From Ranitomeya imitator (lineage: Eukaryota): a stretch of DNA of 64,000 nt. The stretch is taken from positions 156,488,001-156,552,000 of the forward strand of contig NC_091290.1 of the NCBI RefSeq assembly GCF_032444005.1, given 5' to 3'. The position numbers were made by a program, and so were the translations under genes. How positions within the stretch are numbered: position 1 is the stretch's first letter; the number at the start of each line of letters is the position of its first letter. Shown one piece after another: positions 15,401 to 62,004 of the stretch. The notes beneath the pieces were generated by a model. The model made no database searches and was not told the origin of the DNA. It was given only the letters and a program-made list of their open reading frames with translations.

Positions 15401-18400
15401 TGGTCATTATACAGTATGGAGCATCATGTGTGGCCATTATACAGTATGGAGCATCATGTGTGGTCATTATACAGTATGGAGCATCATGTGTGGTCATTAT
15501 ACAGTATGGAGCATTATGTGTGGCCATTATACAGTATGGAGCATCATGTGTGGTCATTATACAGTATGGAGCATCATGTGAGGTCATTATACAGTATGGA
15601 GCATCATGTGTGGTCATTATACAGTATGGAGCATCATGTGTGGTCATTATACAGTATGGAGCATCATGTGTGGCCATTATACAGTATGGAGCATCATGTG
15701 TGGCCATTATACAGTATGGAGCATCATGTGCGATCATTATACAGTATGGAGCATCATGTGTGGCCATTGTACAGTATGGAGCGTCGTGTGTGGCCATTAT
15801 ACAGTATGGAGCATCATGTGTGGCCATTATACAGTATGGAGCGTCGTGTGTGGCCATTATACAGTATGGAGCATCATGTGTGGCCATTATACAGTATGGA
15901 GCATCATGTGTGGTCATTATACAGTATGGAGCATCATGTGTGGCCATTATACAGTATGGAGCGTCGTGTGTGGCCATTATACAGTATGGAGCATCATGTG
16001 TGGCCATTATACAGTATGGAGCGTCGTGTGTGGCCATTATACAGTATGGAGCATCATGTGTGGTCATTATACAGTATGGAGCATCATGTGTGGCCATTAT
16101 ACAGTATGGAGCGTCGTGTGTGGCCATTATACAGTATGGAACATCATGTGTGGCCATTATACAGTATGGAGCATCATGTGCGGCCATTATACAGTATGGA
16201 GCATCATGTGTGGTCATTATACAGTATGGAGCATCATGTGTGGCCATTATACAGTATGGAGCATCATGTGTGGCCATTATACAGTATGGAGCATCATGTG
16301 CGGTCATTATACAGTATGGAGCATCATGTGCGGTCATTATACAGTATTGAGCATCATGTAGGGTCATTATACAGTATGGAGCATCATGTGTGGCCATTAT
16401 ACAGTATGGAGCATCATGTGTGGCCATTATACAGTATGGAGCATCATGTGCGGTCATTATACAGTATGGAGCATCATGTGTGGCCATTGTACAGTATGGA
16501 GCATCATGTGTGGCCATTATACAGTATGGAGCATCATGTGCGGTCATTATGCAGTATGGAGCATCATGTGCGGTCATTATGCAGTATGGAGCATCATGTG
16601 TGGCCATTATACAGTATGGAGCATCATATGCGGTCATTATACAGTATGGAGCATCATGTGCGATCATTATACAGTATGGAGCATCATGTGTGGCCATTAT
16701 ACAGTATGGAGCATCATGTGGGGCCATTATAAAGTATGGAGCATCATGTGGGGCCATTATAAAGTATGGAGCATCATGTGTGGCCATTATATAGTATGGA
16801 GCATCATGTGCGATCATTATACAGTATGGAGCATCATGTGTGGTCATTATACAGTATGGAGCATCATGTGTGGTCATTATACAGTATGGAGCATCATGTG
16901 CGGCCATTATACAGTATGGAGCAGTGTGTGGGGTCATTATATAGTATGGAGCATCATGAGCGGCCATTATACAGTATGGAGCATCATGTGCGGCCATTAT
17001 ACAGTATGGAGCATCATGTGTGGTCATTATACAGTATGGAGCATCATGTGTGGCCATTATACAGTATGGAGCATCATGTGTGGTCATTATACAGTATGGA
17101 GCATCATGTGTGGCTATTATACAGTATGGAGCATCATGTGTGGCCATTATATAGTATGGAGCATCTTGAGCGGCCATTATACAGTATGGAGCAGTGTGTG
17201 GGGTCATTATATAGTATGGAGCATCATGAGCGGCCATTATACAGTATGGAGCATCATGTGCGATCATTATACAGTATGGAGCATCATGTGTGGTCATTAT
17301 ACAGTATGGAGCATCATGAGCGGCCATTATACAGTATGGAGCATCATGTGCGGCCATTATACAGTATGGAGCATCATGTGTGGCCATTATACAGTATGGA
17401 GCATCTTGAGCGGCCATTATACAGTATGGAGCGTTGTGTGTGGCCATTATACAGTATGGAACATCATGTGTGGCCATTATACAGTATGGAGCATCATGTG
17501 CGGCCATTATACAGTATGGAGCATCATGTGTGGTCATTATACAGTATGGAGCATCATGTGTGGCCATTATACAGTATGGAGCATCATGTGTGGCCATTAT
17601 ACAGTATGGAGCATCATGTGCGGTCATTATACAGTATGGAGCATCATGTGCGGTCATTATACAGTATTGAGCATCATGTAGGGTCATTATACAGTATGGA
17701 GCATCATGTGGGGCCATTATACAGTATGGAGCACTGTGCGGTCATACAGTATGGAGCATCATGTGTGGTCATTATACAGTATGGAGCGTCATGTGGGGTC
17801 ATTATACAGTATGGAGCATCATGTGCGGCCATTATACAGTATGGAGCATCATGTGGGGTGATTATACAGTATGGAACATCATGTGTGGCCATTATACAGT
17901 ATGTAGCATCATGTGCGGCCATTATACAGCATGGAGCATCATGTGGGGCCATTATACAGTATGGAGCACTGTGTGACCATTATACAGTATGGAGCATCAT
18001 GTGGGGCTATTATACAGTATGGAGCACCATGTGGGGCCATTATACAGTATGGAGCATCATGTGTGTTCATTATACAGTATGGAGCATCATGTGGGGCCAT
18101 TATACAGTATGGAGCACTGTGTGGCGATTATACAGTATGGAGCATCATGTGCAGTCATTATACAGCATGGAGCATCATGTGGGGCCATTATACAGTATGG
18201 AGCACTGTGTGGCCATTATACAGTATGGAGCATCATGTGGGGCCATTATACAGTATGGAGCACTGTGCGGTCATTATACAGTATGGAGCATCATGTGTGG
18301 TCATTATACAGTATGGAGCATCATGTGGGGTCATTATACAGTATGGAGCATCATGTGCGGCCATTATACAGTATGGAGCATCATGTGGGGTGATTATACA

Positions 18401-21400
18401 GTATGGAGCATCATGTGCGGCCATTATACAGTATGTAGCATCATGTGCGGCCATTATACAGCATGGAGCATCATGTGGGGCCATTATACAGTATGGAGCA
18501 CTGTGTGGCCATTATACAGCATGGAGCATCATGTGGGGCCATTATACAGTATGGAGCACTGTGTGGCCATTATACAGTATGGAGCATCATGTGGGGCCAT
18601 TATACAGTATGGAGCGCTGTGCGGTCATTATACAGTATGGAGCATCATGTGGGGTCATTATACAGTATGGAGCATCATGTGGGGTCATTATACAGTATGG
18701 AGCATCATGTGCGGCCATTATACAGTATGGAACATCATATGTGGCCATTATACAGTATGGAGCATCATGTGCGGCCATTATACAGCATGGAGCATCATGT
18801 GGGGCCATTATACAGTATGGAGCACTGTGCGGTCATTATACAGTATGGAGCGTCATGTGCGGCCATTATACAGTATGGAGCATCATGTGCGGCCATTATA
18901 CAGTATGGAGCATCATGTGCGGCCATTATACAGTATGGAGCACCATGTGGGGCCATTATACAGTATGGAGCACTGTGCGGTCATTATACAGTATGGAGCA
19001 TCATGTGTGGTCATTATACAGCATGGAGCATCATGTGGGGTCATTATACAGCATGGAGCATCATGTGTGGTCATTATACAGTATGGAGCATCATGTGCGG
19101 CCATTATACAGTATGGAGCATCATGTGCGGTCATTATACAGTATGGAGCATCATGTGTGGCCATTATACAGTATGGAACATCATGTGTGGCCATTATACA
19201 GTACTGAGCATCATGTGGGGCCATTATACAGTATTGAGCATCATGTGGGGTCATTATACAGCATGGAGCATCATGTGGGGTCATTATACAATATGGAGCA
19301 TCATGTGTGGCCATTATACAGTATGGAGCATCATGTGTGGCCATTATACAGTATGGAGCATCATGTGTGGCCATTATACAGTACTGAGCATCATGTGGGG
19401 CCATTATACAGTATGTAGCATCATGTGCGGCCATTATACAGCATGGAGCATCATGTGGGGCCATTATACAGTATGGAGCACTGTGTGGCCATTATACAGT
19501 ATGGAGCATCATGTGTGGCCATTATACAGTATGGAGCACTGTGTGGCCATTATACAGTATGGAGCATCATGTGTGGCCATTATACAGTATGGAGCATCAT
19601 GTGTGGCCATTATACAGTATGGAGAACTATGTGGCCATTATACAGTATGGAGCACTGTGTGGCCATTATACAGTATGGAGCATCATGTGCGGTCATTATA
19701 CAGTATGGAGCATCATGTGTGGCCATTATACAGTATGGAGAACTATGTGGCCATTATACAGTATGTAGCATCATGTGCGGCCATTATACAGGATGGAGCA
19801 TCATGTGCGGCCATTATACAGCATGGAGCATCATGTGGGGCCATTATACAGTATGGAGCATCATGTGGGGCCATTATACAGGATGGAGCATCATGTGCGG
19901 TCATTATACAGTATGGAGCATCATGTGTGGCCATTATACAGTATGGAGCATCATGTGGGGCCATTATACAGGATGGAGCATCATGTGCGGTCATTATACA
20001 GTATGGAGCATCATGTGCGGCCATTATACAGGATGGAGCATCATGTGTGGCCATTATACAGTATGTAGCATCATGTGCGGCCATTATACAGGATGGAGCA
20101 TCATGTGCGGCCATTATACAGTATGGAGCACTGTGTGGCGATTATACAGCATGGAGCATCATGTGTGTTCATTATACAGTATGGAGCATCATGTGGGGCC
20201 ATTATACAGTATGGAGCATCATGTGTGGCCATTATACAGTATGGAGCATCATGTGGGGCCATTATACAGGATGGAGCATCATGTGCGGTCATTATACAGT
20301 ATGGAGCATCATGTGTGGTCGTTATACAGTATGGAGCATCATGTGGGGCCATTATACAGTATGGAGCATCATGTGGGGCCATTATACAGTATGGAGCATC
20401 ATGTGTGGTCATTATACAGTATGGAACATCATGTGGGGCCATTATACAGGATGGAGCATCATGTGCGGTCATTATACAGTATGGAGCATCATGTGTGTTC
20501 ATTATACAGTATGGAGCATCATGTGGGGCCATTATACAGTATGGAGCATCATGTGGGGTGATTATACAGTATGGAGCATCATGTGTGGTCATTATACAGT
20601 ATGGAGCATCATGTGTGTTCATTATACAGTATGGAGCATCATGTGGGGCCATTATACAGTATGGAGCATCATGTGGGGCCATTATACAGTATGGAGCATC
20701 ATGTGTGGTCATTATACAGTATGGAACATCATGTGGGGCCATTATACAGGATGGAGCATCATGTGCGGTCATTATACAGTATGGAGCATCATGTGTGTTC
20801 ATTATACAGTATGGAGCATCATGTGCGGCCATTATACAGTATGGAGCATCATGTGGGGTGATTATACAGTATGGAACATCATGTGTGGCCATTATACAGT
20901 ATGTAGCATCATGTGCGGCCATTATACAGCATGGAGCATCATGTGGGGCCATTATACAGTATGGAGCACTGTGTGGCCATTATACAGTATGGAGCATCAT
21001 GTGGGGCTATTATACAGTATGGAGCACCATGTGGGGCCATTATACAGTATGGAGCATCATGTGTGTTCATTATACAGTATGGAGCATCATGTGGGGCCAT
21101 TATACAGTATGGAGCACTGTGTGGCGATTATACAGTATGGAGCATCATGTGCAGTCATTATACAGCATGGAGCATCATGTGGGGCCATTATACAGTATGG
21201 AGCACTGTGTGGCCATTATACAGTATGGAGCATCATGTGGGGCCATTATACAGTATGGAGCACTGTGCGGTCATTATACAGTATGTAGCATCATGTGTGG
21301 TCATTATACAGTATGGAGCATCATGTGGGGTCATTATACAGTATGGAGCATCATGTGGGGCCATTATACAGTATGGAGCACTGTGCGGTCATTATACAGT

Positions 21401-24273
21401 ATGTAGCATCATGTGTGGTCATTATACAGTATGGAGCACTGTGCGGTCATTATACAGTATGTAGCATCATGTGTGGTCATTATACAGTATGGAGCATCAT
21501 GTGTGGCCATTATACAGTATGGAGCATCATGTGTGGTCATTATACAGTATGGAGCATCATGTGGGGTCATTATACAGTATGGAGCATCATGTGCGGCCAT
21601 TATACAGTATGGAGCATCATGTGGGGTGATTATACAGTATGGAACATCATGTGTGGCCATTATACAGTATGTAGCATCATGTGCGGCCATTATACAGCAT
21701 GGAGCATCATGTGGGGCCATTATACAGTATGGAGCACTGTGTGGCCATTATACAGCATGGAGCATCATGTGGGGCCATTATACAGTATGGAGCACTGTGT
21801 GGCCATTATACAGTATGGAGCATCATGTGGGGCCATTATACAGTATGGAGCGCTGTGCGGTCATTATACAGTATGGAGCATCATGTGGGGTCATTATACA
21901 GTATGGAGCATCATGTGGGGTCATTATACAGTATGGAGCATCATGTGCGGCCATTATACAGTATGGAACATCATATGTGGCCATTATACAGTATGGAGCA
22001 TCATGTGCGGCCATTATACAGCATGGAGCATCATGTGGGGCCATTATACAGTATGGAGCACTGTGCGGTCATTATACAGTATGGAGCATCATGTGCGGCC
22101 ATTATACAGTATGGAGCATCATGTGCGGCCATTATACAGTATGGAGCATCATGTGCGGCCATTATACAGTATGGAGCACCATGTGGGGCCATTATACAGT
22201 ATGGAGCACTGTGCGGTCATTATACAGTATGGAGCATCATGTGTGGTCATTATACAGCATGGAGCATCATGTGGGGTCATTATACAGCATGGAGCATCAT
22301 GTGTGGTCATTATACAGTATGGAGCATCATGTGCGGCCATTATACAGTATGGAGCATCATGTGCGGTCATTATACAGTATGGAGCATCATGTGTGGCCAT
22401 TATACAGTATGGAACATCATGTGTGGCCATTATACAGTATGGAACATCATGTGGGGCCATTATACAGTATGGAGCATCATGTGTGGTCATTATACAGCAT
22501 GGAGCATCATGTGGGGTCATTATACAGCATGGAGCATCATGTGTGGTCATTATACAGTATGGAGCATCATGTGCGATCATTATACAGTATGGAGCGTCAT
22601 GTGTGGTCATTATACAGTATGGAACATCATGTGTGGCCATTATACAGTATGGAACATCATGTGGGGCCATTATACAGTATGGAGCATCATGTGTGGTCAT
22701 TATACAGTGTTGAGCATCATGTGGGGTCATTATACAGCATGGAGCATCATGTGTGGTCATTATACAGTATGGAGCATCATGTGCGATCATTATACAGTAT
22801 GGAGCGTCATGTGGGGCCATTATACAGTACTGAGCATCATGTGGGGCCATTATACAGTACTGAGCATCATGTGTGGCCATTATACAGTATGGAGCATCAT
22901 GTGTGGCCATTATACAGTATGGACCATCATGTGTGGCCATTATACAGTATGGAGCATCATGTGGGGCCATTATACAGTATGGAACATCATGTGTGGCCAT
23001 TATACAGTATGGAGCATCATGTGGGGCCATTATACAGTATTGAGCATCATGAGCGGCCATTATACAGTATGGAGCATCATGTGTGGCCATTATACAGTAT
23101 GGAGCATCATGTGGGGCCATTATACAGTATGGAGCATCATGTGGGGCCATTATACAGTATGGTGCACTGTGTGGCCATAATACAGTATGGAGCATCATGT
23201 ATGGCCATTATACAGTATGGAGCATCATGTGGGGCCATTATACAGTATGGAGCATTATGTGGGGCCATTATACAGTATGGAGCATCATGTGGGGCCATTA
23301 TACAGTATTGAGCATCATGAGCGGCCATTATACAGGATGGAGCATCATGTGCGGCTGTTATACAGTATGGAGCATCATGTGGGGCCATTATACAGTATGG
23401 AGCATCATGTGGGGCCATTATACAGTATGGTGCACTGTGTGGCCATTATACAGTATGGAGCATCATGTGAGGTCATTATACAGTATGGAGCATCATGTGG
23501 GGCCATTATACAGTATGGAGCACTGTGTGGCCATTATACAGTATAGTATTAGGTGGTAATAGTATGCTGATAATTAGTGACAGCTAGACCAGGTAAAAAG
23601 CGCATGTGGCTGCTTGCTTACCTTGGAAGACTTGGTGGTGTGCAAAGTGGTTGCATGTATGAGGGTGCAGATTTGGTGCTGTACCAGGCGTCCGGAGTTG
23701 GGGTTGTTGTTCGGAGCCAAGCAGTGAAGTCTAGGTGTAAATGTGCTGTGTAGAGCCAGGGAAGCCCCGGCCGGTGGCGTCAGTGGATACTAAGTGTGGA
23801 AACAAGATGGCCGATAAGCAGCACCTACATGTGACGTCACACTAGGTACGGAGCGAGGGAAATGTTGGGGGGCGACCAAAGAACGGCGCTCTTCATCATC
23901 ATCATCATCAGGGTAATAGCTCCCCAACAACACAGCCCATCGTATATAGCTCCACATGTACTCACATTAACGCAGAGTGGACACGTCCCTCACTCCACCA
24001 TAGCTGGACGGGCACACGTGGCTCGCAGTGACATGAGGGTATAGAGCCCACAGGCGCCTCTTCTATTAGAACATCCAGGCTCCATCTATGGAGAGAAGCG
24101 GCGGAGACCCGGGCAGCATCTCACCTATCACCCGACACACCACAAGGATGGGCCGCTGCCCTCAGCCCCGCCACACACATCACTCACGCCAGGTCCGTGT
24201 TCTCCACCACAAACTTCACGTTCTCGTCCGTCAGATCCGTGATGCGGACGGTCGGCTGGTTGGCGTACGGCAT
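351..24273 (-). CDS. POLR2C: RNA polymerase II subunit C (RPB3), partial: exons 1-5, join(24188-24273,1243-1292,766-834,637-689,351-479); downstream exons lie left of the window
   Basis: Spliced translation [129 protein letters not shown] is near-identical to the remembered vertebrate RPB3 N-terminus. All junctions are GT-AG, exon sizes are 86/50/69/53/129 and the frame is continuous. Intron 1 is 22.9 kb. Confidence 0.97.
637..689 (-). CDS. POLR2C: POLR2C exon 4 (53 bp)
   Basis: (G)[17 protein letters not shown]; cag|GG and AGG|gtgggt. Confidence 0.95.
766..834 (-). CDS. POLR2C: POLR2C exon 3 (69 bp)
   Basis: (A)[22 protein letters not shown]; cag|CC and G|gtgagt. Confidence 0.95.
1243..1292 (-). 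CDS. POLR2C: POLR2C exon 2 (50 bp)
   Basis: [16 protein letters not shown]; cag|G and G|gtgagt. Confidence 0.95.
1355..2429. repeat. 74-bp minisatellite, about 14 copies, POLR2C intron 1
   Basis: ggagaaagtatgtgccccccacatcctcctccgggggcttcactgtcctcatctacatccatagacattaatat. Confidence 0.95.
3276..3565. mobile_element. Harbinger/PIF-type MITE (290 bp) inserted in the L2
   Basis: TIRs ggccaagttcacattagcgttgtgcgg and ccgcacaacgctaatgtgaatgaagcc; TTA duplication at 3273-3275 and 3566-3568; removal restores the L2 frame ([15 protein letters not shown]). Confidence 0.85.
3631..3907 (+). mobile_element. 277-bp retroposed insert with 14-bp TSD, possibly a Penelope-like terminal fragment
   Basis: acagagtgaaacag duplicated at 3617-3630 and 3908-3921; removal restores the L2 frame ([10 protein letters not shown]); AATAAA at 3846 and ggtgagtgcc near the 3' end. 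Family assignment is tentative. Confidence 0.6.
5334..6760. mobile_element. Solo LTR (Gypsy-like), 1427 bp, inserted in the L2 RT tail
   Basis: Termini TGTCACGAT...ATCGTGACA; 5-bp TSD acatc/acatt; removal restores LKNISRIRP. Confidence 0.8.
7666..10512. repeat. 35-bp minisatellite, about 80 copies
   Basis: agaggacggcacgctccacccggtctatacaccac. Confidence 0.97.
10810..11040. repeat. 22-bp minisatellite, about 10 copies
   Basis: agaggtcagcaggggccaggga. Confidence 0.93.
11416..11690. mobile_element. Possible degenerate hAT-type MITE fragment
   Basis: Starts cagtggtggtgaacctatggcacgcg, resembling hAT-MITE termini; no matching right TIR found. Confidence 0.3.
11733..13283 (-). mobile_element. 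Tc1-family DNA transposon (1551 bp), transposase frameshifted
   Basis: TIRs cagtcatggccaaaagttttgagaatgacac and gtgtctcattctcaaaatttttgtccatgactg; TA TSD. Transposase runs from ATG 12909 to 11910 with HTH region, GRPRK, FSDES, HDGAPCH and DLNPIENLW (DD34E); frameshifts near 12315 and 12118. Confidence 0.93.
13512..15345 (-). mobile_element. L1-clade LINE 3' fragment (ORF2 C-terminus, 3' UTR, poly-A), interrupted at 14354-15099
   Basis: [19 protein letters not shown]...YLTPTRL...CLRC...HMIWRCP (CCHC knuckle); AATAAA at 13537-13532 followed by an A-tail on the minus strand. Confidence 0.8.
14354..15099 (-). mobile_element. 746-bp fold-back insertion with 14-bp TSD (about 312-bp inverted arms, 77-bp spacer)
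   Basis: tcctctcccagtgt at 14340-14353 and 15100-15113; arms 14402-14713 and 14791-15103 are near-perfect reverse complements; removal restores the L1 frame. Confidence 0.8.
15348..23545. repeat. 30/28-bp satellite, about 8.2 kb (about 275 copies)
   Basis: tacagtatggagcatcatgtgtggccatta, with a 28-bp variant tacagtatggagcactgtgtggccatta after about 17730. Confidence 0.97.
24188..24273 (-). CDS. POLR2C: POLR2C exon 1, coding part (86 bp)
   Basis: ATG at 24273; [29 protein letters not shown]; donor GC|gtgagt. Confidence 0.96.
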
Positions 24274-24786
24274 GTCGGCAGGAGAAGCAGCAACCGGAAG
24301 TGAGGGCCATAGAGCGGAGAGGCAGGAGAGAGCGCCGAGGGAGGATAGAGCTGCGGCTGGAGGACTGAGCGGCTCCGGAAGTGAGGGCCATAGAGCGGAG
24401 ACGCGGGAGGGAGCGCCGAGGGAGGAAAGAGCTGCGGCTGGAGGACTGAGCGGCTCCGGAAGTGAGGGCCATAGAGCGGAGAGGCAGGAGAGAGCGCCGA
24501 GGGGAGATACAGCTGCGGCTGGAGGACTGAGCGGCTCCGGAAGTGAGGGCCATAGAGCGGAGAGGCAGGAGGGAGCGCCGAGGGGAGATACAGCTGCGGC
24601 TGGAGGACTGAGCGGCTCCGGAAGTGAGGGCCATAGAGAGGAGACGCGGGAGGGAGCGCCGAGGGGAGATACAGCTGCGGCTGGAGGACTGAGCGGCTCC
24701 GGAAGCACGTGGTGCGGCGGTGTGGAGGGCAGTATAGAGCTGCAGTGTGTGGTGAGGCTGTACAGAGAGCTGTGTGGAGCGGCAGG
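24274..24786. promoter_or_regulatory. Bidirectional promoter / 5' UTR region shared by POLR2C and UTP6
   Basis: 513 bp between divergent ATGs, CpG-rich. CCGGAAGTG occurs at 24294, 24375, 24456, 24537 and 24618, and CCGGAAGC at 24699. Confidence 0.85.
24294..24705. repeat. 81-bp tandem repeat, 5 units, inside the POLR2C/UTP6 promoter
   Basis: Exact 81-bp spacing of CCGGAAG(T/C); unit about ccggaagtgagggccatagagcggagaggcaggagagagcgccgaggggagatacagctgcggctggaggactgagcggct. Confidence 0.95.
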
Positions 24787-24878
24787 ATGGCGGAGTTCGT
24801 CCAGCGCCGCGCGGAGGATCACATCCCGGAGCTGCAGCAGCTGGAGCGGGTCGGGCTGCTGACCTGTAAGGAAGTCAG
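24787..24878 (+). CDS. UTP6: UTP6 exon 1, coding part (92 bp)
   Basis: [30 protein letters not shown](R); Kozak aggATGG; donor AG|gtgaga. Confidence 0.94.
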
Positions 24879-27800
24879 GTGAGAGCCCCGGTGTGTGTGG
24901 AGGTCGGTGTCTGGGGGCCCCCGGTGTGTGTGTGTGTGTGTAGGAGGTCGGTGTCTGGGGGGCCCCCGGTGTGTGTGTGTGTGTGTGGAGGTCGGTGACT
25001 CTGGGGGGCCCCCGGTGTGTGTGGAGGTCGGTGACTCTGGGGGGCCCCGGTGTGTGTGTGTGTAGGTCGGTGACTCTGGGGGGCCCCCGGTGTGTGTGTG
25101 TGGAGGTCGGTGACTCTGGGGGGCCCCCGGTGTGTGTGTGTGGAGGTCGGTGACTCTGGGGGGCCCCCGGTGTGTGTGGAGGTCGGTGACTCTGGGGGGC
25201 CCCCGGTGTGTGTGTGTGGAGGTCGGTGACTCTGGGGGGCCCCCGGTGTGTGTGTGTGGAGGTCGGTGACTCTGGGGGGCCCCCGGTGTGTGTGTAGGTC
25301 GGTGACTCTGGGGGGCCCCCGGTGTGTGTGTGTGGAGGTCGGTGACTCTGGGGGGCCCCCGGTGTGTGTGTAGGTCGGTGACTCTGGGGGGCCCCCGGTG
25401 TGTGTGTGTGGAGGTCGGTGACTCTGGGGGGCCCCCGGTGTGTGTGTGTGTGGAGGTTGGTGACTCTGGGGGGCCCCCGGTGTGTGTGTAGGTCGGTGAC
25501 TCTGGGGGGCCCCCGGTGTGTGTGTGTGGAGGTCGGTGACTCTGGGGGGCCCCCGGTGTGTGTGTGTGGAGGTCGGTGACTCTGGGGGGCCCCCGGTGTG
25601 TGTGTGTGGAGGTCGGTGACTCTGGGGGGCCCCCGGTGTGTGTGGAGGTCGGTGACTCTAAGGGGCCCCCGGTGTGTGTGTAGGTCGGTGTCTGGGGGGC
25701 CCCCGGTGTGTGTGTGTGGAGGTCGGTGACTCTGGGGGGCCCCCGGTGTGTGTGTGTGGAGGTCGGTGTCTGGGGGGCCCCCGGTGTGTGTGTGGAGGTC
25801 GGTGACTCTGGGGGGCCCCCGGTGTGTGTGGAGGTCGGTGACTCTGGGGGGCCCCCGGTGTGTGTGGAGGTCGGTGACTCTGGGGGGCCCCCGGTGTGTG
25901 TGTGTAGGTCGGTGTCTGGGGGGCCCCCGGTGTGTGTGTGTGGAGGTCGGTGACTCTGGGGGGCCCCCGGTGTGTGTGTGTGGAGGTCGGTGACTCTGGG
26001 GGGCCCCCGGTGTGTGTGTGTGGAGGTCGGTGACTCTGGGGGGCCCCCGGTGTGTGTGTGTGGAGGTCGGTGACTCTGGGGGGCCCCCGGTGTGTGTGGA
26101 GGTCGGTGACTCTGGGGGGCCCCCGGTGTGTGTGTGTGGAGGTCGGTGACTCTGGGGGGCCCCCGGTGTGTGTGTGTGGAGGTCGGTGACTCTGGGGGGC
26201 CCCCGGTGTGTGTGGAGGTCGGTGACTCTGGGGGGCCCCCGGTGTGTGTGTGTAGGTCGGTGTCTGGGGGGCCCCCGGTGTGTGTGTGTGGAGGTCGGTG
26301 ACTCTGGGGGGCCCCCGGTGTGTGTGTGTGGAGGTCGGTGACTCTGGGGGGCCCCCGGTGTGTGTGTGTGGAGGTCGGTGACTCTGGGGGGCCCCCGGTG
26401 TGTGTGTGTGGAGGTCGGTGACTCTGGGGGGCCCCCGGTGTGTGTGGAGGTCGGTGACTCTGGGGGGCCCCCGGTGTGTGTGTGTGGAGGTCGGTGACTC
26501 TGGGGGGCCCCCGGTGTGTGTGGAGGTCGGTGACTCTGGGGGGCCCCCGGTGTGTGTGTAGGTCGGTGTCTGGGGGGCCCCCGGTGTGTGTGTGTGGAGG
26601 TCGGTGACTCTGGGGGGCCCCCGGTGTGTGTGTGTGGAGGTCGGTGACTCTGGGGGGCCCCCGGTGTGTGTGGAGGTCGGAGACTCTGGGGGGCCCCCGG
26701 TGTGTGTGTGTAGGTCGGTGACTCTGGGGGGCCCCCGGTGTGTGTGGAGGTCGGTGTCTGGGGGGCCCCCGGTGTGTGTGTGTGTGTAGGTCGGTGACTC
26801 TGGGGGGCCCCCGGTGTGTGTGGAGGTCGGTGACTCTGGGGGGCCCCCGGTGTGTGTGGAGGTCGGAGACTCTGGGGGGCCCCCGGTGTGTGTGTGGAGG
26901 TCGGTGACTCTGGGGGGCCCCCGGTGTGTGTGGAGGTCGGTGTCTGGGGGGCCCCCGGTGTGTGTGTGTGTAGGTCGGTGACTCTGGGGGGCCCCCGGTG
27001 TGTGTGGAGGTCGGTGACTCTGGGGGGCCCCCGGTGTGTGTGTGTAGGTCGGTGTCTGGGGGGCCCCCGGTGTGTGTGTGTGGAGGTCGGTGACTCTGGG
27101 GGGCCCCCGGTGTGTGTGTAGGAGGTCGGTGTCTGGGGGGCCCCCGGTGTGTGTGTGTGGAGGTCGGTGACTCTGGGGGGCCCCCGGTGTGTGTGTAGGA
27201 GGTCGGTGTCTGGGGGGCCCCCGGTGTGTGTGTGTGGAGGTCGGTGAATCTGGGGGGCCCCCGGTGTGTGTGGAGGTCGGTGACTCTGGGGGGCCCCCGG
27301 TGTGTGTGGAGGTCGGTGTCTGGGGGCCCCCGGTGTGTGTGTAGGTCGGTGTCTGGGGGGCCCCCGGTGTGTGTGTGTGTGTGGAGGTCGGTGACTCTGG
27401 GGGGCCCCCGGTGTGTGTGTGTGGAGGTCGGTGACTCTGGGGGGCCCCCGGTGTGTGTGGAGGTCGGTGACTCTGGGGGCCCCCGGTGTGTGTGGAGGTC
27501 GGTGTCTGGGGGCCCCCGGTGTGTGTGTAGGTCGGTGTCTGGGGGGCCCCCGGTGTGTGTGTGTGGAGGTCGGTGACTCTGGGGGGCCCCCGGTGTGTGT
27601 GTGTAGGTCGGTGTCTGGGGGGCCCCCGGTGTGTGTGTGTGGAGGTCGGTGACTCTGGGGGGCCCCCGGTGTGTGTGTGTGGAGGTCGGTGACTCTGGGG
27701 GGCCCCCGGTGTGTGTGTGTGGAGGTCGGTGACTCTGGGGGGCCCCCGGTGTGTGTGTGTGTGGAGATCGGTGACTCTGGGGGGCCCCCGGTGTGTGTGG

Positions 27801-30800
27801 AGGTCGGTGACTCTGGGGGGCCCCCGGTGTGTGTGTGTGGAGGTCGGTGACTCTGGGGGGCCCCCGGTGTGTGTGGAGGTCGGTGACTCTGGGGGGCCCC
27901 CGGTGTGTGTGTAGGTCGGTGTCTGGGGGGCCCCCGGTGTGTGTGTGTGGAGGTCGGTGACTCTGGGGGGCCCCCGGTGTGTGTGTGTGGAGGTCGGTGA
28001 CTCTGGGGGGCCCCCGGTGTGTGTGGAGGTCGGAGACTCTGGGGGGCCCCCGGTGTGTGTGGAGGTCGGTGACTCTGGGGGGCCCCCGGTGTGTGTGTGT
28101 AGGTCGGTGTCTGGGGGGCCCCCGGTGTGTGTGTGTGGAGGTCGGTGACTCTGGGGGGCCCCCGGTGTGTGTGTAGGAGGTCGGTGTCTGGGGGGCCCCC
28201 GGTGTGTGTGTGTGGAGGTCGGTGAATCTGGGGGGCCCCCGGTGTGTGTGGAGGTCGGTGACTCTGGGGGGGCCCCCGGTGTGTGTGGAGGTCGGTGTCT
28301 GGGGGCCCCCGGTGTGTGTGTAGGTCGGTGTCTGGGGGGCCCCCGGTGTGTGTGTGTGTGGAGGTCGGTGACTCTGGGGGGCCCCCGGTGTGTGTGTGTG
28401 GAGGTCGGTGACTCTGGGGGGCCCCCGGTGTGTGTGTGGAGGTCGGTGACTCTGGGGGGCCCCCGGTGTGTGTGGAGGTCGGTGACTCTGGGGGGCCCCC
28501 GGTGTGTGTGGAGGTCGGTGACTCTGGGGGGCCCCCGGTGTGTGTGGAGGTCGGTGACTCTGGGGGGCCCCCGGTGTGTGTGTAGGAGGTCGGTGTCTGG
28601 GGGGCCCCCGGTGTGTGTGTGTGGAGGTCGGTGAATCTGGGGGGCCCCCGGTGTGTGTGGAGGTCGGTGACTCTGGGGGGCCCCCGGTGTGTGTGGAGGT
28701 CGGTGTCTGGGGGCCCCCGGTGTGTGTGTAGGTCGGTGTCTGGGGGGCCCCCGGTGTGTGTGTGTGTGGAGGTCGGTGACTCTGGGGGGCCCCCGGTGTG
28801 TGTGTGTGGAGGTCGGTGACTCTGGGGGGCCCCCGGTGTGTGTGGAGGTCGGTGACTCTGGGGGCCCCCGGTGTGTGTGGAGGTCGGTGTCTGGGGGCCC
28901 CCGGTGTGTGTGTAGGTCGGTGTCTGGGGGGCCCCCGGTGTGTGTGTGTGGAGGTCGGTGACTCTGGGGGGCCCCCGGTGTGTGTGTGTGTAGGTCGGTG
29001 TCTGGGGGGCCCCCGGTGTGTGTGTGTGGAGGTCGGTGACTCTGGGGGGCCCCCGGTGTGTGTGGAGGTCGGTGACTCTGGGGGGCCCCCGGTGTGTGTG
29101 GAGGTCGGTGACTCTGGGGGGCCCCCGGTGTGTGTGTAGGAGGTCGGTGTCTGGGGGGCCCCCGGTGTGTGTGTGTGGAGGTCGGTGACTCTGGGGGGCC
29201 CCCGGTGTGTGTGGAGGTCGGTGACTCTGGGGGGCCCCCGGTGTGTGTGGAGGTCGGTGACTCTGGGGGGCCCCCGGTGTGTGTGGAGGTCGGTGACTCT
29301 GGGGGGCCCCCGGTGTGTGTGTGTAGGTCGGTGTCTGGGGGGCCCCCGGTGTGTGTGTGTGGAGGTCGGTGACTCTGGGGGGCCCCCGGTGTGTGTGGAG
29401 GTCGGTGACTCTGGGGGGCCCCCGGTGTGTGTGGAGGTCGGTGACTCTGGGGGGCCCCCGGTGTGTGTGGAGGTCGGTGACTCTGGGGGGCCCCCGGTGT
29501 GTGTGTGTAGGTCGGTGTCTGGGGGGCCCCCGGTGTGTGTGTGTGGAGGTCGGTGACTCTGGGGGGCCCCCGGTGTGTGTGTGTAGGTCGGTGTCTGGGG
29601 GGCCCCCGGTGTGTGTGTGTGGAGGTCGGTGACTCTGGGGGGCCCCCGGTGTGTGTGGAGGTCGGTGACTCTGGGGGGCCCCCGGTGTGTGTGGAGGTCG
29701 GTGACTCTGGGGGGCCCCCGGTGTGTGTGTGTAGGTCGGTGTCTGGGGGGCCCCCGGTGTGTGTGTGTGGAGGTCGGTGACTCTGGGGGGCCCCCGGTGT
29801 GTGTGGAGGTCGGTGACTCTGGGGGGCCCCCGGTGTGTGTGGAGGTTGGTGACTCTGGGGTGCCCCCGGTGTGTGTGTGGAGGTCGGTGTCTGGGGGGCC
29901 CCCGGTGTGTGTGTGTGGAGGTCGGTGTCTGGGGGGGCCCCGTGTGTGTGTGTGTGGAGGTCGGTGTCTGGGGGGCCCCCGGTGTGTGTGTGTGGAGGTC
30001 GGTGTCTGGGGGGCCCCCCGTGTGTGTGTGTGGAGGTCGGTGACTCTGGGGGGGGCCGCCGGTGTGTGTGTGGAGGTTGGTGACTCTGGGGGGCCCCCGG
30101 TGTGTGTGTGTGTGTGTGTAGGTCGGTGTCTGGGGGCCCCCGGTGTGTGTAGGTCGGTGTCTGGGGGCCCCCGGTGTGTGGAGGTCGGTGTCTGGGGGGC
30201 CCCCGTGTGTGTGTGTGGAGGTCGGTGACTCTGGGGGGCCCCCGGTGTGTGTGGAGGTCGGTGACTCTGGGGGGCCCCCGGTGTGTGTGGAGGTCGGTGA
30301 CTCTGGGGGGCCCCCGGTGTGTGTGTAGGAGGTCGGTGTCTGGGGGGCCCCCGGTGTGTGTGTGTGGAGGTCGGTGACTCTGGGGGGCCCCCGGTGTGTG
30401 TGGAGGTCGGTGACTCTGGGGGGCCCCCGGTGTGTGTGGAGGTCGGTGACTCTGGGGGGCCCCCGGTGTGTGTGGAGGTCGGTGACTCTGGGGGGCCCCC
30501 GGTGTGTGTGTGTAGGTCGGTGTCTGGGGGGCCCCCGGTGTGTGTGTGTGGAGGTCGGTGACTCTGGGGGGCCCCCGGTGTGTGTGGAGGTCGGTGACTC
30601 TGGGGGGCCCCCGGTGTGTGTGGAGGTCGGTGACTCTGGGGGGCCCCCGGTGTGTGTGTGTAGGTCGGTGTCTGGGGGGCCCCCGGTGTGTGTGTGTGGA
30701 GGTCGGTGACTCTGGGGGGCCCCCGGTGTGTGTGGAGGTCGGTGACTCTGGGGGGCCCCCGGTGTGTGTGGAGGTTGGTGACTCTGGGGGGCCCCCGGTG

Positions 30801-33800
30801 TGTGTGTGTGGAGGTCGGTGTCTGGGGGGCCCCCGGTGTGTGTGTGTGGAGGTCGGTGTCTGGGGGGGCCCCGTGTGTGTGTGTGTGGAGGTCGGTGTCT
30901 GGGGGGCCCCCGGTGTGTGTGTGTGGAGGTCGGTGTCTGGGGGGCCCCCCGTGTGTGTGTGTGGAGGTCGGTGACTCTGGGGGGGGCCGCCGGTGTGTGT
31001 GGAGGTCGGTGACTCTGGGGGGCCCCCGGTGTGTGTGTGTGGAGGTCGGTGACTCTGGGGGGCCCCCGGTGTGTGTGTGTGGAGGTCGGTGTCTGGGGGG
31101 CCCCGTGTGTGTGTGTGTGGAGGTCGGTGTCTGGGGGGCCCCGTGTGTGTGGAGGTCGGTGTCTGGGGGGCCCCCGGTGTGTGTGTGTGGAGGTCGGTGT
31201 CTGGGGGGGCCCCGTGTGTGTGTGTGTGGAGGTCGGTGTCTGGGGGGCCCCCGGTGTGTGTGTGTGTGTGGAGGTCGGTGTCTGGGGGGCCCCCCGTGTG
31301 TGTGTGTGTGGAGGTCGGTGACTCTGGGGGGCCCCCGGTGTGTGTGTGTGTGGAGGTCGGTGACTCTGGGGGGCCCCCGGTGTGTGTGTGTGGAGGTCGG
31401 TGTCTGGGGGGCCCCGTGTGTGTGTGTGTGGAGGNNNNNNNNNNNNNNNNNNNNNNNNNNNNNNNNNNNNNNNNNNNNNNNNNNNNNNNNNNNNNNNNNN
31501 NNNNNNNNNNNNNNNNNNNNNNNNNNNNNNNNNNNNNNNNNNNNNNNNNNNNNNNNNNNNNNNNNNNNNNNNNNNNNNNNNNNNNNNNNCCCCGTGTGTG
31601 TGTGTGGAGGTCGGTGTCTGGGGGGCCCCCGGTGTGTGTGTGTGGAGGTCGGTGTCTGGGGGGGCCCCGTGTGTGTGTGTGTGGAGGTCGGTGTCTGGGG
31701 GGCCCCCGGTGTGTGTGTGGAGGTCGGTGTCTGGGGGGCCCCCCGTGTGTGTGTGTGTGGAGGTCGGTGACTCTGGGGGGCCCCCGGTGTGTGTGTGTGT
31801 GGAGGTCGGTGACTCTGGGGGGCCCCCGGTGTGTGTGTGTGGAGGTCGGTGTCTGGGGGGCCCCGTGTGTGTGTGTGTGGAGGTCGGTGTCTGGGGGGCC
31901 CCGTGTGTGTGTGTGTGTGTGGAGGTCGGTGTCTGGGGGGCCCCCGGTGTGTGTGTGTGTGTGGAGGTCGGTGTCTGGGGGGCCCCGTGTGTGTGTGTGG
32001 AGGTCGGTGTCTGGGGGGCCCCCGGTGTGTGTGTAGGAGGTCGGTGTCTGGGGGGCCCCCGGTGTGTGTGTAGGAGGTCGGTGTCTGGGGGGCCCCCGGT
32101 GTGTGTGTAGGAGGTCGGTGACTCTGGGGGGCCCCCGGTGTGTGTGTAGGAGGTCGGTGTCTGGGGGGCCCCGTGTGTGTGTGTGGAGGTCGGTGTCTGG
32201 GGGGCCCCCGGTGTGTGTGTAGGAGGTCGGTGTCTGGGGGGCCCCCGGTGTGTGTGTAGGAGGTCGGTGTCTGGGGGGCCCCGTGTGTGTGTGTGGAGGT
32301 CGGTGTCTGGGGGGCCCCGTGTGTGTGTAGGAGGTCGGTGTCTGGGGGGCCCCCGGTGTGTGTGTAGGAGGTCGGTGTCTGGGGGGCCCCCGGTGTGTGT
32401 GTAGGAGGTCGGTGACTCTGGGGGGCCCCCGGTGTGTGTGTAGGAGGTCGGTGTCTGGGGGCCCCCGGTGTGTGTGTGTGTGTGTGTGTAGGTCGGTGTC
32501 TGGGGGCCCCCGGTGTGTGTGTGTGTGGAGGTCGGTGACTCTGGGGGGCCCCCGGTGTGTGTGTGTGTGGAGGTCGGTGTCTGGGGGGCCCCCGGTGTTT
32601 GTGTGTGTGGAGGTCGGTGTCTGGGGGGCCCCCGGTGTGTGTGTGGAGGTCTGTGACTCTGGGGGGCCCCGTAAGGCACCGCTCACATCTCGTCTTATTT
32701 TTTGCAGATCTGTCATTAAGAAACGAATGTCTCTGGAGTACAAGCTGGGGAGGAGGACAGTAGAGAAGGAGGACTTCATCAGCTACATCCAGGTGAGCCA
32801 AACAGGACACACACACACGCCCCCTCCCTCCCTCCGCCCCCTCCCTCCGCTCTCGCCCCCTCCCTCCGCTCTCGCCCCCTCCCTCCGCTCTCGCCCCCTC
32901 CCTCCGCTCTCGCCCCCTCCCTCCGCTCTCGCCCCCTCCCTCCGCTCTTGCCCCCTCCCTCCCTCCGCTCTCGCCCCCTCCCTCCCTCCGCTCTCGCCCC
33001 CTCCCTCCCTCCGCTCTCACCCCCTCCCTCCCTCCCTCCGCTCTCGCCCCCTCCGCTCTCGCCCCCTCCCTCCCTCCCTCCCTCCGCTCTCGCCCCCTCC
33101 CTCCCTCCCTCCCTCCGCTCTCGCCCCCTCCCTCCCTCCCTCCCTCCGCTCTCGCCCCCTCCCTCCCTCTCTCCGCTCTCGCCCCCTCCCTCCCTCCCTC
33201 CGCTCTCGCCCCCTCCCTCAACGCTCTTGCCTTGTCTTTTATAGTATGAGATCAACTTTCTGGAGCTGCTTAAAAAGAGGAGGCAGGTATGAAGGATTCA
33301 ATGGTTCTGTGAGGTCGGGGGGAATGGCTGTTAGTTTGGAGAGGTCGGGGGAATGGCTGTTAGTTTGGAGAGGTCGGGGGGGAATGGCTGTTAGTTTGGA
33401 GAGGTCGGGGGGGAATGGCTGTTAGTTTGGAGAGGTCGGGGGAATGGCTGTTAGTTTGGAGAGGTCGGGGGGAATGACTGTTAGTTTGGAGAGGTCGGGG
33501 GGAATGGCTGTTAGTTTGGAGAGGTCGGGGGAATGGCTGTTAGTTTGGAGAGGTCGGGGGGGAATGGCTGTTAGTTTGGAGAGGTCGGGGGGGAATGGCT
33601 GTTAGTTTGGAGAGGTCGGGGGAATGGCTGTTAGTTTGGAGAGGTCGGGGGGGAATGGCTGTTAGTTTGGAGAGGTCGGGGGGGAATGGCTGTTAGTTTG
33701 GAGAGGTCGGGGGAATGGCTGTTAGTTTGGAGAGGTCGGGGGGGAATGACTGTTTGGAGAGGTCGGGGGGAATGGCTGTTAGTCTGGAGAGGTCGGGGGG

Positions 33801-61870: not shown

Positions 61871-61960
61871 GACTGCAGCTGTAGGAAGAGGGCGGGGACT
61901 AATCTGCCCGGGGACCTCATATCCGGTCACGAGACCGGAAGTGGTGAATAGGCGCCTCAC
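61871..61960 (-). promoter_or_regulatory. COQ9 proximal promoter (GC box plus ETS site)
   Basis: GGGCGGGG near 61890; CCGGAAGTG at 61935-61943; further GC boxes at about 61654-61685 in early intron 1; CpG-rich. Confidence 0.65.
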
Positions 61961-62004
61961 CTGAACCAGCGGCGGGAGAGGGAGGTGCGGAACATACCCC
62001 CGTG

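What the first reader, a model, noticed from the sequence alone, without database searches (positions are those of the whole stretch)
24274..24786. Bidirectional POLR2C/UTP6 promoter built from a 5x 81-bp tandem amplification of its ETS/GABPA site
Seen: about 410 of the 513 bp between the two start codons are five 81-bp units, giving five CCGGAAGTG and one CCGGAAGC at exact 81-bp spacing. The first lies only 21 bp from the POLR2C ATG. Without the extra units the intergenic distance would be under about 200 bp. Established: CCGGAAGTG (GABPA/ELK) is the signature motif of vertebrate bidirectional housekeeping promoters. Inference: a promoter VNTR that could act as a copy-number dial on both a Pol II core subunit and a ribosome-biogenesis factor, and could multiply transcription start sites.
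Basis: partly seen in the sequence, partly recalled or inferred. Interest (0 to 1): 0.72.

Follow-up and report, generated by a model that had tools for sequence, protein, structure and literature searches.

The report
ETS-site minisatellite inside POLR2C/UTP6 promoter
In a poison frog, an 81-base piece of the shared on-switch between a Pol II subunit gene and a ribosome-assembly gene has been copied five times; the repeat is real, but both genes still start at its outer edges and nothing yet shows the extra copies act as a dial.

Summary
An 81-bp x 5.1 tandem array (24294-24705, 95% match) fills 412 of the 513 bp between the POLR2C (minus) and UTP6 (plus) start codons. It carries five CCGGAAGTG and one CCGGAAGC at exact 81-bp spacing.

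Spliced RNA contigs from three studies show both first exons are used. The mRNA 5' ends lie at the two outer ETS cores: POLR2C about 24289, UTP6 about 24696-24711. The four extra units therefore sit between two divergent start sites that are now 413 bp apart, and would be about 89 bp apart without them.

The array is 5 x 81 + 7 bp, and the extra 7 bp are CCGGAAG. This suggests duplication by misalignment between two ETS cores that were already there.

Each unit carries an out-of-frame upstream ATG on the POLR2C strand, which argues against productive internal POLR2C starts. The 81-bp spacing (7.7 helical turns) does not fit the GABP-tetramer phasing model.

62% of this window is minisatellite. 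Unchecked first-reader notes of this scan report similar promoter-motif arrays elsewhere in this genome (CRE, ZNF143-type).

Copy-number variation and any dosage effect remain untested. Verdict: a real, ordinary promoter minisatellite, a new member of a known kind, probably tolerated or mildly stimulatory.

The parts
24294..24705 (.). 81-bp minisatellite, 5 full units plus 7 bp (CCGGAAG)
   Evidence: TRF period 81, 5.1 copies, 95% match, score 726. Units listed in register. No copy of the unit elsewhere in the window.
24294..24302 (+). Outer ETS/GABP consensus CCGGAAGTG next to the POLR2C start site
   Evidence: Exact match. The POLR2C RNA contig ends at 24289, 5 bp away.
24375..24626 (+). Four internal CCGGAAGTG sites, starting at 24375, 24456, 24537 and 24618
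   Evidence: Exact matches at 81-bp spacing.
24699..24711 (+). Outer ETS core CCGGAAGC overlapping a CACGTG E-box (24706-24711), at the UTP6 start site
   Evidence: UTP6 RNA contig 5' ends at 24696, 24702 and 24711.
24187..24273 (-). POLR2C exon 1 coding part (29 codons), followed by a GTGAGT-type donor
   Evidence: Translation. RPB3 residues 1-29, E 5e-13. Spliced to 1291 in run X3.
24274..24289 (-). Observed POLR2C 5' UTR, about 16 nt
   Evidence: X3 contig covers 24187-24289 and then runs straight into sequencing-adapter letters.
24702..24786 (+). Observed UTP6 5' UTR, about 76-91 nt, with no ATG
   Evidence: X12 contig starts at 24702 directly after 5'-adapter letters. X4 starts at 24696 and X3 at 24711. 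No + strand ATG in 24274-24786.
24787..24878 (+). UTP6 exon 1 coding part, donor GT at 24879
   Evidence: Translation. UTP6 residues 1-29, E 2.9e-5. Three RNA contigs jump from 24878 to exon 2.
32708..32793 (+). UTP6 exon 2
   Evidence: The loose end of the RNA contigs maps here. UTP6 residues 33-59, E 3.7e-5. Acceptor and donor visible.
1244..1291 (-). POLR2C exon 2, about 16 codons (lower boundary approximate). Intron 1 is about 22.9 kb.
   Evidence: The loose end of the X3 contig maps to 1270-1291. Translation [16 protein letters not shown], then stops.
24310..24634 (-). Five upstream ATGs on the POLR2C strand, one per unit (A at 24310, 24391, 24472, 24553, 24634)
   Evidence: All are out of frame with the POLR2C ATG and open through exon 1.
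15348..23544 (.). 8.2-kb 30-bp minisatellite in POLR2C intron 1, forming the left wall of the promoter island
   Evidence: TRF, 275 copies.
24891..32670 (.). 7.8-kb 36-40-bp minisatellite that fills UTP6 intron 1 and starts 12 bp after the splice donor
   Evidence: TRF. Holds an N run at 31435-31589, left untouched.

Best explanation
This is a compact, ETS-driven, TATA-less divergent promoter shared by POLR2C and UTP6. An 81-bp segment inside it has been tandemly amplified from one to five copies. The array ends in an extra 7-bp CCGGAAG. The simplest history is therefore that the original promoter already had two same-direction ETS cores 81 bp apart, one beside each start site, and that slippage or unequal exchange between these two short repeats duplicated the segment between them. 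Further unequal exchanges then built the present mosaic of five units.

Both genes still start at the two outer ETS cores (shown by RNA contig ends). The four added units, each with a perfect GABP-type site, therefore lie between the two start sites and stretch their distance from about 89 bp to 413 bp.

Inferred, not shown: the internal sites sit in open promoter chromatin and are probably bound by ETS factors. They add at most a modest, redundant boost, and the array persists because this minisatellite-prone genome produces such arrays often and this one does little harm.
For: The array and motifs are exact.

The extra 7 bp at the right edge would match by chance with P of about 2e-4. The rest of the right flank is no more unit-like than shuffles (score 21 against 16 +/- 2.8).

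Spliced RNA contigs from three studies put the UTP6 5' ends at 24696, 24702 (abutting a 5' adapter) and 24711. One contig puts the POLR2C 5' end at 24289, abutting an adapter.

ETS cores and one CACGTG are the only common promoter motifs found. There is no TATA, Sp1, NRF1, CCAAT or full YY1 site between the start codons; the only YY1-like core overlaps the UTP6 ATG itself. GC is 0.67 and CpG observed/expected is 0.84.

Each unit holds an out-of-frame upstream ATG for POLR2C, consistent with POLR2C starting downstream of the first of them.

The variant pattern among units is mosaic: columns 28 and 31 group units 2 and 5, while columns 49, 50 and 55 group units 1 and 2. This is typical of repeated unequal exchange.

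62% of the window is tandem arrays, in 22 merged blocks.

Unchecked notes of this scan describe many arrays grown from functional elements in this frog genome, including arrays at other divergent promoters.
Against: No outgroup or second species could be examined, so the single-unit, two-ETS ancestor is inferred from the array's edges alone.

Contigs cannot show minor start sites. Run X4 has a low-depth contig over 24595-24705 (3.6 against 30.7 for the mRNA) that might be a minor upstream UTP6 start. Its depth equals that of the same run's intronic contig (3.4), so it may be background.

The POLR2C 5' end rests on one run, because longer POLR2C contigs were probably removed by the tool's filter for conserved sequence.

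Five perfect consensus sites, and an invariant 47-bp block around each one, could reflect selection. The test has no power here: 8 variable columns, fewer independent events.

The + strand has no ATG at all. This would permit harmless internal UTP6 starts (P = 0.06, not significant).
Confidence: 0.6

Rival explanations
1. One reading: the array is a functional copy-number dial. Each added ETS site raises output of both POLR2C and UTP6, and copy number varies among individuals.
For: The sites are perfect strict-consensus GABP sites (PMC2077898). Promoter tandem repeats act as expression QTLs in humans (PMC4857002). Repeat number in the TYMS enhancer region modulates expression (PMC7712088). ETS-containing tandem duplications activate the TERT promoter through GABP (PMC9481613).
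Against: No copy-number variation could be measured. Both genes are essential housekeeping genes for which variable dosage has no obvious benefit. The 81-bp spacing is 7.71 helical turns, out of phase and far beyond the 2-3 turns at which the GABP tetramer effect was seen, and that effect fell with distance. The local background rate of arrays is very high.
Confidence: 0.15
2. Tandem-promoter reading: every unit is a working start site, so the array multiplies start sites in one or both directions.
For: ETS-only promoters start close to the ETS core, as both outer sites do here. The internal units share the core and 21 invariant downstream bases. The + strand has no ATG, so longer UTP6 leaders would be harmless. 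A low-depth X4 contig covers 24595-24705.
Against: In three runs the UTP6 contigs stop at 24696-24711, one of them directly on adapter letters. The POLR2C contig stops at 24289 on adapter letters. Internal POLR2C starts would put 1-5 out-of-frame upstream ATGs before the real one. The low-depth contig matches intronic background depth.
Confidence: 0.1
3. Spacer reading: the expansion was kept because it moves the two start sites apart, possibly leaving room for a nucleosome, and so uncouples two promoters that were once tightly shared.
For: The start sites are now 413 bp apart instead of about 89 bp.
Against: This is inference only. No expression comparison or chromatin data are available, and any inert DNA would serve the same purpose.
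Confidence: 0.05
4. Assembly artefact: the copies are an assembler's over-expansion of one or two units.
For: Short-read contigs break inside the array, and run X1 has no contigs over 24480-24890.
Against: The units carry distinct variants. An independent DNA run bridges the unit 1 to unit 2 junction with unit-specific letters. Another run matches units 4 and 5 plus the right edge exactly.
Confidence: 0.03

Closest known systems
GABP/ETS-driven vertebrate bidirectional promoters (Collins et al. 2007, PMC2077898)
   Same: Two head-to-head genes with start sites under 1 kb apart. CpG-rich and TATA-less. Carries the strict-consensus GABP site CCGGAAGTG.
   Different: Here the site is present six times through tandem amplification. 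No other usual partner motif (Sp1, NRF1, CCAAT) lies between the start codons; the only YY1-like core overlaps the UTP6 ATG. Binding was not tested, and the species is a frog.
TERT promoter tandem duplications that add an ETS motif and recruit the GABP tetramer (PMC9481613)
   Same: A tandem duplication of wild-type promoter sequence that copies a native ETS motif.
   Different: The TERT duplications are about 22 bp (2 helical turns), somatic and in phase, and their activity falls with distance. Here the unit is 81 bp (7.71 turns, out of phase), germline and present in five copies, with no activity data.
Human promoter and 5'-UTR VNTRs, such as the TYMS enhancer-region 28-bp repeat with USF sites (PMC7712088), and promoter tandem-repeat eQTLs (PMC4857002)
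   Same: A minisatellite in a housekeeping-gene promoter whose unit holds a transcription-factor site.
   Different: In those cases copy-number polymorphism and an expression effect are documented. Here neither is. This array lies between two divergent start sites rather than in a 5' UTR.
Minisatellites grown from functional elements in repeat-prone genomes
   Same: A short functional signal is caught in a local tandem expansion, in a region packed with unrelated arrays.
   Different: The seed here is a promoter core with an ETS site, not a splice site or an RNA-processing signal.
Formation of homotypic binding-site clusters by local duplication (PMC3188502)
   Same: Neighbouring binding sites share a common origin by local duplication.
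   Different: That work is in fly enhancers and concerns short, decayed duplications. Here the duplication is young and fully recognisable.

Membership tests
Vertebrate bidirectional (divergent) promoter | Two genes on opposite strands, head to head, with start sites less than 1 kb apart | tested here: met
   POLR2C runs on the minus strand from about 24289 and UTP6 on the plus strand from about 24696-24711, so the starts are 413 bp apart.
Vertebrate bidirectional (divergent) promoter | CpG-rich and TATA-less | tested here: met
   GC 0.67 and CpG observed/expected 0.84 over 24274-24786. No TATAWA.
Vertebrate bidirectional (divergent) promoter | GABP/ETS factor bound at the promoter and needed for activity in both directions | not testable with these tools
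   Only the consensus sequence is shown. No ChIP or reporter data.
Minisatellite / VNTR | Head-to-tail units of roughly 10-100 bp | tested here: met
   81 bp x 5.1, 95% match.
Minisatellite / VNTR | Copy number varies among individuals | tested here: inconclusive
   The runs are held only as k-mer contigs that break inside the array, so copies cannot be counted.
Functional promoter VNTR (copy-number dial) | Expression changes with the number of units | not testable with these tools
   Contig depth is not a measure of expression, and no genotypes are available.
GABP-tetramer paired-site architecture (TERT-type) | Two ETS sites a few full helical turns apart, in phase | tested here: not met
   81 bp is 7.71 turns at 10.5 bp per turn. 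Only sites three units apart (243 bp, 23.14 turns) come near phase (criterion from PMC9481613).
Tandem promoter array (each unit a start site) | Transcripts start in every unit | tested here: inconclusive
   Contig 5' ends lie at the outer cores only, plus one low-depth contig over unit 5 at background depth. Contigs cannot show minor starts.

The most novel reading that the evidence does not exclude
The internal ETS sites are all occupied, and the array works as a heritable, length-variable amplifier that co-tunes a Pol II core subunit and a ribosome-assembly factor. On this reading it would be one case of a genome-wide habit of this frog lineage of building transcription-factor-site minisatellites at housekeeping promoters. 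Unchecked notes of this scan report CRE and ZNF143-type arrays at other divergent promoters. That would give a natural allelic series for studying how site number and start-site spacing set the output of a divergent promoter.
Probability: 0.12. Interest if true: 0.6.

Novelty: new member of a known kind. Interest (0 to 1): 0.33.

Why it matters
In itself it is a small thing: one more minisatellite in a genome full of them, at a promoter type that is well understood.

Its value is as a clean natural experiment. A compact two-way promoter has had 324 bp, carrying four extra perfect ETS sites, inserted between its two start sites, and both essential genes still start at the original outer sites.

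Comparing individuals or sister species with different unit numbers would test three things directly:
- whether extra GABP-type sites add output;
- whether the distance between divergent start sites matters;
- whether a shared promoter is really one unit or two.

The 7-bp CCGGAAG overlap also gives a concrete, testable case of a binding-site pair acting as the microhomology that seeds a minisatellite.

Tried and rejected
1. Dispersed-repeat or transposon origin of the unit. blastn-short of a two-unit probe and of both flanks against the window gave only 10-14-nt chance matches. Rejected within this window; the rest of the genome was not searched.

2. The right flank as a decayed sixth unit. 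Local alignment score was 21 against 16 +/- 2.8 for shuffles, which is not significant. The array ends sharply after CCGGAAG.

3. Selection on the ETS motif judged from within-array variation. The 8 variable columns all fall in columns 22-55, but they reflect only about 5 independent events, so the test has no power.

4. Absence of + strand ATGs as a sign of selection for long UTP6 leaders. P = 0.06 on the 189 unique bases, not significant.

5. Coding repeat or N-terminal extension. The UTP6 frame has a stop at 24634. The POLR2C frame is open upstream but has no in-frame ATG, and the RNA starts at 24289. Rejected.

6. Comparative data. No tool here reaches other frog genomes by DNA. POLR2C exons beyond exon 2 lie outside the window. 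Joining UTP6 exons into one protein query was left out, and the costly protein searches were not spent on exon-sized queries that could only return fragments. The exons were searched one by one by reference.

7. Papers naming POLR2C and UTP6 together: nothing about their linkage.

8. Earlier notes of this scan. None covers this locus.

Full report
**What is there**

Tandem Repeats Finder reports one array at 24294-24705 with period 81, 5.1 copies, 95% matches, no indels and score 726. Read in register, the five full units differ pairwise at 1-7 of 81 positions.

CCGGAAGTG starts every unit, at 24294, 24375, 24456, 24537 and 24618. The whole 64-kb window holds six copies of this 9-mer against 0.44 expected, and none of 100 shuffles reached six. 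A sixth core, CCGGAAG followed by C, starts at 24699, exactly 81 bp further on.

The minus-strand ATG at 24273..24271 opens a 29-codon exon that matches residues 1-29 of RNA polymerase II subunit RPB3 (E 5e-13). The plus-strand ATG at 24787 opens an exon that matches residues 1-29 of UTP6 (E 2.9e-5, the only hit).

The spacer 24274-24786 is 513 bp. Without the four extra units it would be 189 bp.

**Are the genes live, and where do they start?**

All public runs that hold this stretch are kept as assembled contigs. They cannot give expression levels or minor start sites, but they do show splicing and contig ends. I laid four runs from four studies.

- UTP6. Three runs (X12, X3, X4) have contigs of 1.1-1.9 kb that cover UTP6 exon 1 up to 24878 and then jump to sequence that maps at 32708. 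That site lies behind a proper acceptor and encodes UTP6 residues 33-59. These runs are therefore RNA, and exon 1 is in use.
- UTP6 5' ends. The three contigs begin at 24702 (X12), 24711 (X3) and 24696 (X4). In X12 the contig runs directly out of 24 letters that I recognise, from my own knowledge, as the end of an Illumina 5' RNA adapter.
- POLR2C. Run X3 has a contig covering 24187-24289. At its lower end it continues into sequence that maps to 1270-1291. That sequence is POLR2C exon 2 and reads [16 protein letters not shown].
- POLR2C 5' end. At its upper end the same contig continues into letters that I recognise as the TruSeq read adapter.

The observed mRNA ends are thus about 24289 for POLR2C and about 24696-24711 for UTP6. 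The first lies 5 bp from the first ETS site. The second lies on the last ETS core, which overlaps a CACGTG E-box.

The two start regions are 413 bp apart and bracket the array. Without the four extra units they would be about 89 bp apart.

One low-depth X4 contig (3.6 against 30.7 for the mRNA) covers 24595-24705. Its depth equals that of the same run's contig in the POLR2C intron (3.4). It may be background or a minor upstream start.

The POLR2C end rests on one run. The tool silently drops contigs that resemble conserved human genes, which probably removed the longer POLR2C contigs.

**Is the array an artefact?**

No. A DNA run from another individual (X1, three single-base differences in the flank) has a contig that bridges the unit 1 to unit 2 junction (24344-24454). 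X4 matches 24595-24705 exactly. The copy number itself cannot be checked from k-mer contigs.

**How it arose (inference from anatomy)**

The array is 5 x 81 + 7 bp long, and the extra 7 bp are CCGGAAG.

- The left flank does not resemble the end of a unit.
- Beyond the 7 bp, the right flank is no more unit-like than shuffled sequence (score 21 against 16 +/- 2.8).
- A chance 7-bp match of this composition has P of about 2e-4.

A tandem duplication that carries m bases of overlap at its edge is the usual signature of misalignment between two short direct repeats. The ancestral promoter most likely had two same-direction ETS cores 81 bp apart, one beside each start site, and the segment between them was duplicated.

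The variant pattern among units is mosaic. Columns 28 and 31 group units 2 and 5. Columns 49, 50 and 55 group units 1 and 2 against units 3-5. This points to several later unequal exchanges.

Units differ by 1-9%, so the array is not brand new. The unit has no other copy in the window.

**Background rate**

TRF finds 22 merged arrays covering 39,797 of 64,000 bases, or 62%. The promoter and the two first exons form a 1.35-kb island.

- On one side is an 8.2-kb 30-bp array in POLR2C intron 1.
- On the other is a 7.8-kb 36-40-bp array that begins 12 bp after the UTP6 splice donor.

Earlier notes of this scan are unchecked and used only as leads. They call the genome that of a poison frog, and they describe many arrays grown from functional signals:

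- histone 3' processing signals;
- a snoRNA hairpin;
- a CTCF site;
- a splice acceptor;
- first-reader notes of CRE and ZNF143-type motif arrays at other divergent promoters.

A tandem array in a 513-bp stretch here is therefore expected. What is particular is only that this one caught the ETS site.

**Does the array do anything?**

Apart from the six ETS cores and the one CACGTG, none of the common housekeeping motifs lies between the two start codons: no Sp1, NRF1, CCAAT, E2F, TATA or full YY1 site. The only YY1-like core overlaps the UTP6 ATG. ETS factors are thus the likely main driver.

CCGGAAGTG is the 'strict consensus GABP site'. In human cells it increased reverse-direction activity in four of six one-way promoters. 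GABP bound more than 80% of the divergent promoters tested (PMC2077898). It is reasonable, but not shown, that the internal sites are occupied.

Three things argue against the stronger claims.

1. The RNA ends lie at the outer sites, not at every unit.
2. On the POLR2C strand each unit carries an ATG (A at 24310, 24391, 24472, 24553, 24634). Each is out of frame with the real start and open through exon 1. Any POLR2C transcript that started at an internal unit would carry overlapping upstream reading frames, and the observed start at 24289 lies just downstream of the first of them. The UTP6 strand has no ATG in the whole spacer, but that is not significant (P = 0.06 on the 189 unique bases).
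3. In the best-studied case of ETS duplication, the TERT promoter, activation needs the two sites in helical phase about 2-3 turns apart and falls with distance (PMC9481613). Here neighbouring sites are 7.71 turns apart and out of phase.

**Comparison with what is known**

Tandem repeats in promoters that hold transcription-factor sites and modify expression are well documented:

- human promoter tandem-repeat eQTLs (PMC4857002);
- the TYMS enhancer-region repeat with USF sites (PMC7712088);
- TERT promoter ETS duplications (PMC9481613);
- binding-site clusters formed by local duplication (PMC3188502).

This locus meets the structural definitions of a divergent promoter and of a minisatellite. 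It has not been shown to be variable in copy number or to be a dial, and it fails the phasing criterion of the GABP-tetramer model. I file it as a new member of a known kind.

**Limits**

- No related genome could be reached with the tools, so the ancestral state and the age of the POLR2C-UTP6 linkage are open.
- Only one call each for finding runs and laying reads was allowed, and no raw reads were on offer.
- The exons were searched one by one by reference.
- The N run at 31435-31589 was left as it is.

**Verdict**

The promoter identity is supported by RNA evidence. The 'dial' and 'multiple start sites' ideas are unproven, and for POLR2C unlikely. The most probable reading is a tolerated or mildly stimulatory expansion of a promoter core in a very minisatellite-prone genome. 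Interest is modest, mainly as a natural experiment on site number and start-site spacing in a divergent promoter.

Noticed in passing
window 1-64000: 62% of the window (39,797 bp, 22 merged blocks, 15 of them at least 200 bp) is unrelated minisatellite arrays with periods of 16-81 bp. The POLR2C/UTP6 promoter and first exons form a 1.35-kb island (23545-24890) between an 8.2-kb array and a 7.8-kb array.
   Followed up: partly
window 24879-24891: The 36-40-bp intron array of UTP6 begins only 12 bp after the exon 1 splice donor. Intron 1 (24879-32707) is almost entirely this array, yet it is spliced correctly in three RNA runs.
   Followed up: partly
window 1292-24186: POLR2C intron 1 is about 22.9 kb and holds several large arrays. 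Exon 2 is only about 16 codons (about 1244-1291), and the rest of the gene lies beyond the window start.
   Followed up: partly
window 61630-61990: A second GC-rich, promoter-like stretch. It has a 21-bp unit with a GC-box (GGGGCGGGGC) repeated 2.5 times at 61633-61684, the only other CCGGAAGTG of the window at 61935, and an ATG in good context near 61869. It may be another promoter in which a binding site has begun to duplicate. The gene was not identified.
   Followed up: no
window 61150-61540: A palindromic element of about 390 bp with long inverted arms (MITE-like), just upstream of the GC-rich stretch.
   Followed up: no
window 24781-24793: The UTP6 start codon sits in GGATGGCGG, which resembles the YY1/TISU-type element often found at housekeeping start codons. 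Here the leader is about 85 nt, so a short-leader role is unlikely.
   Followed up: no
window 32726-32728: Run X4, which has no species label, reads T where the window and runs X12 and X3 read A in UTP6 exon 2. This would change Met to Leu. It may be a polymorphism or a closely related taxon.
   Followed up: no
window 24280-24287 (minus strand): The observed POLR2C leader begins in a pyrimidine run (CTTCTCCT) that resembles a TOP-like start. With contig ends alone, the exact first base is unknown.
   Followed up: no
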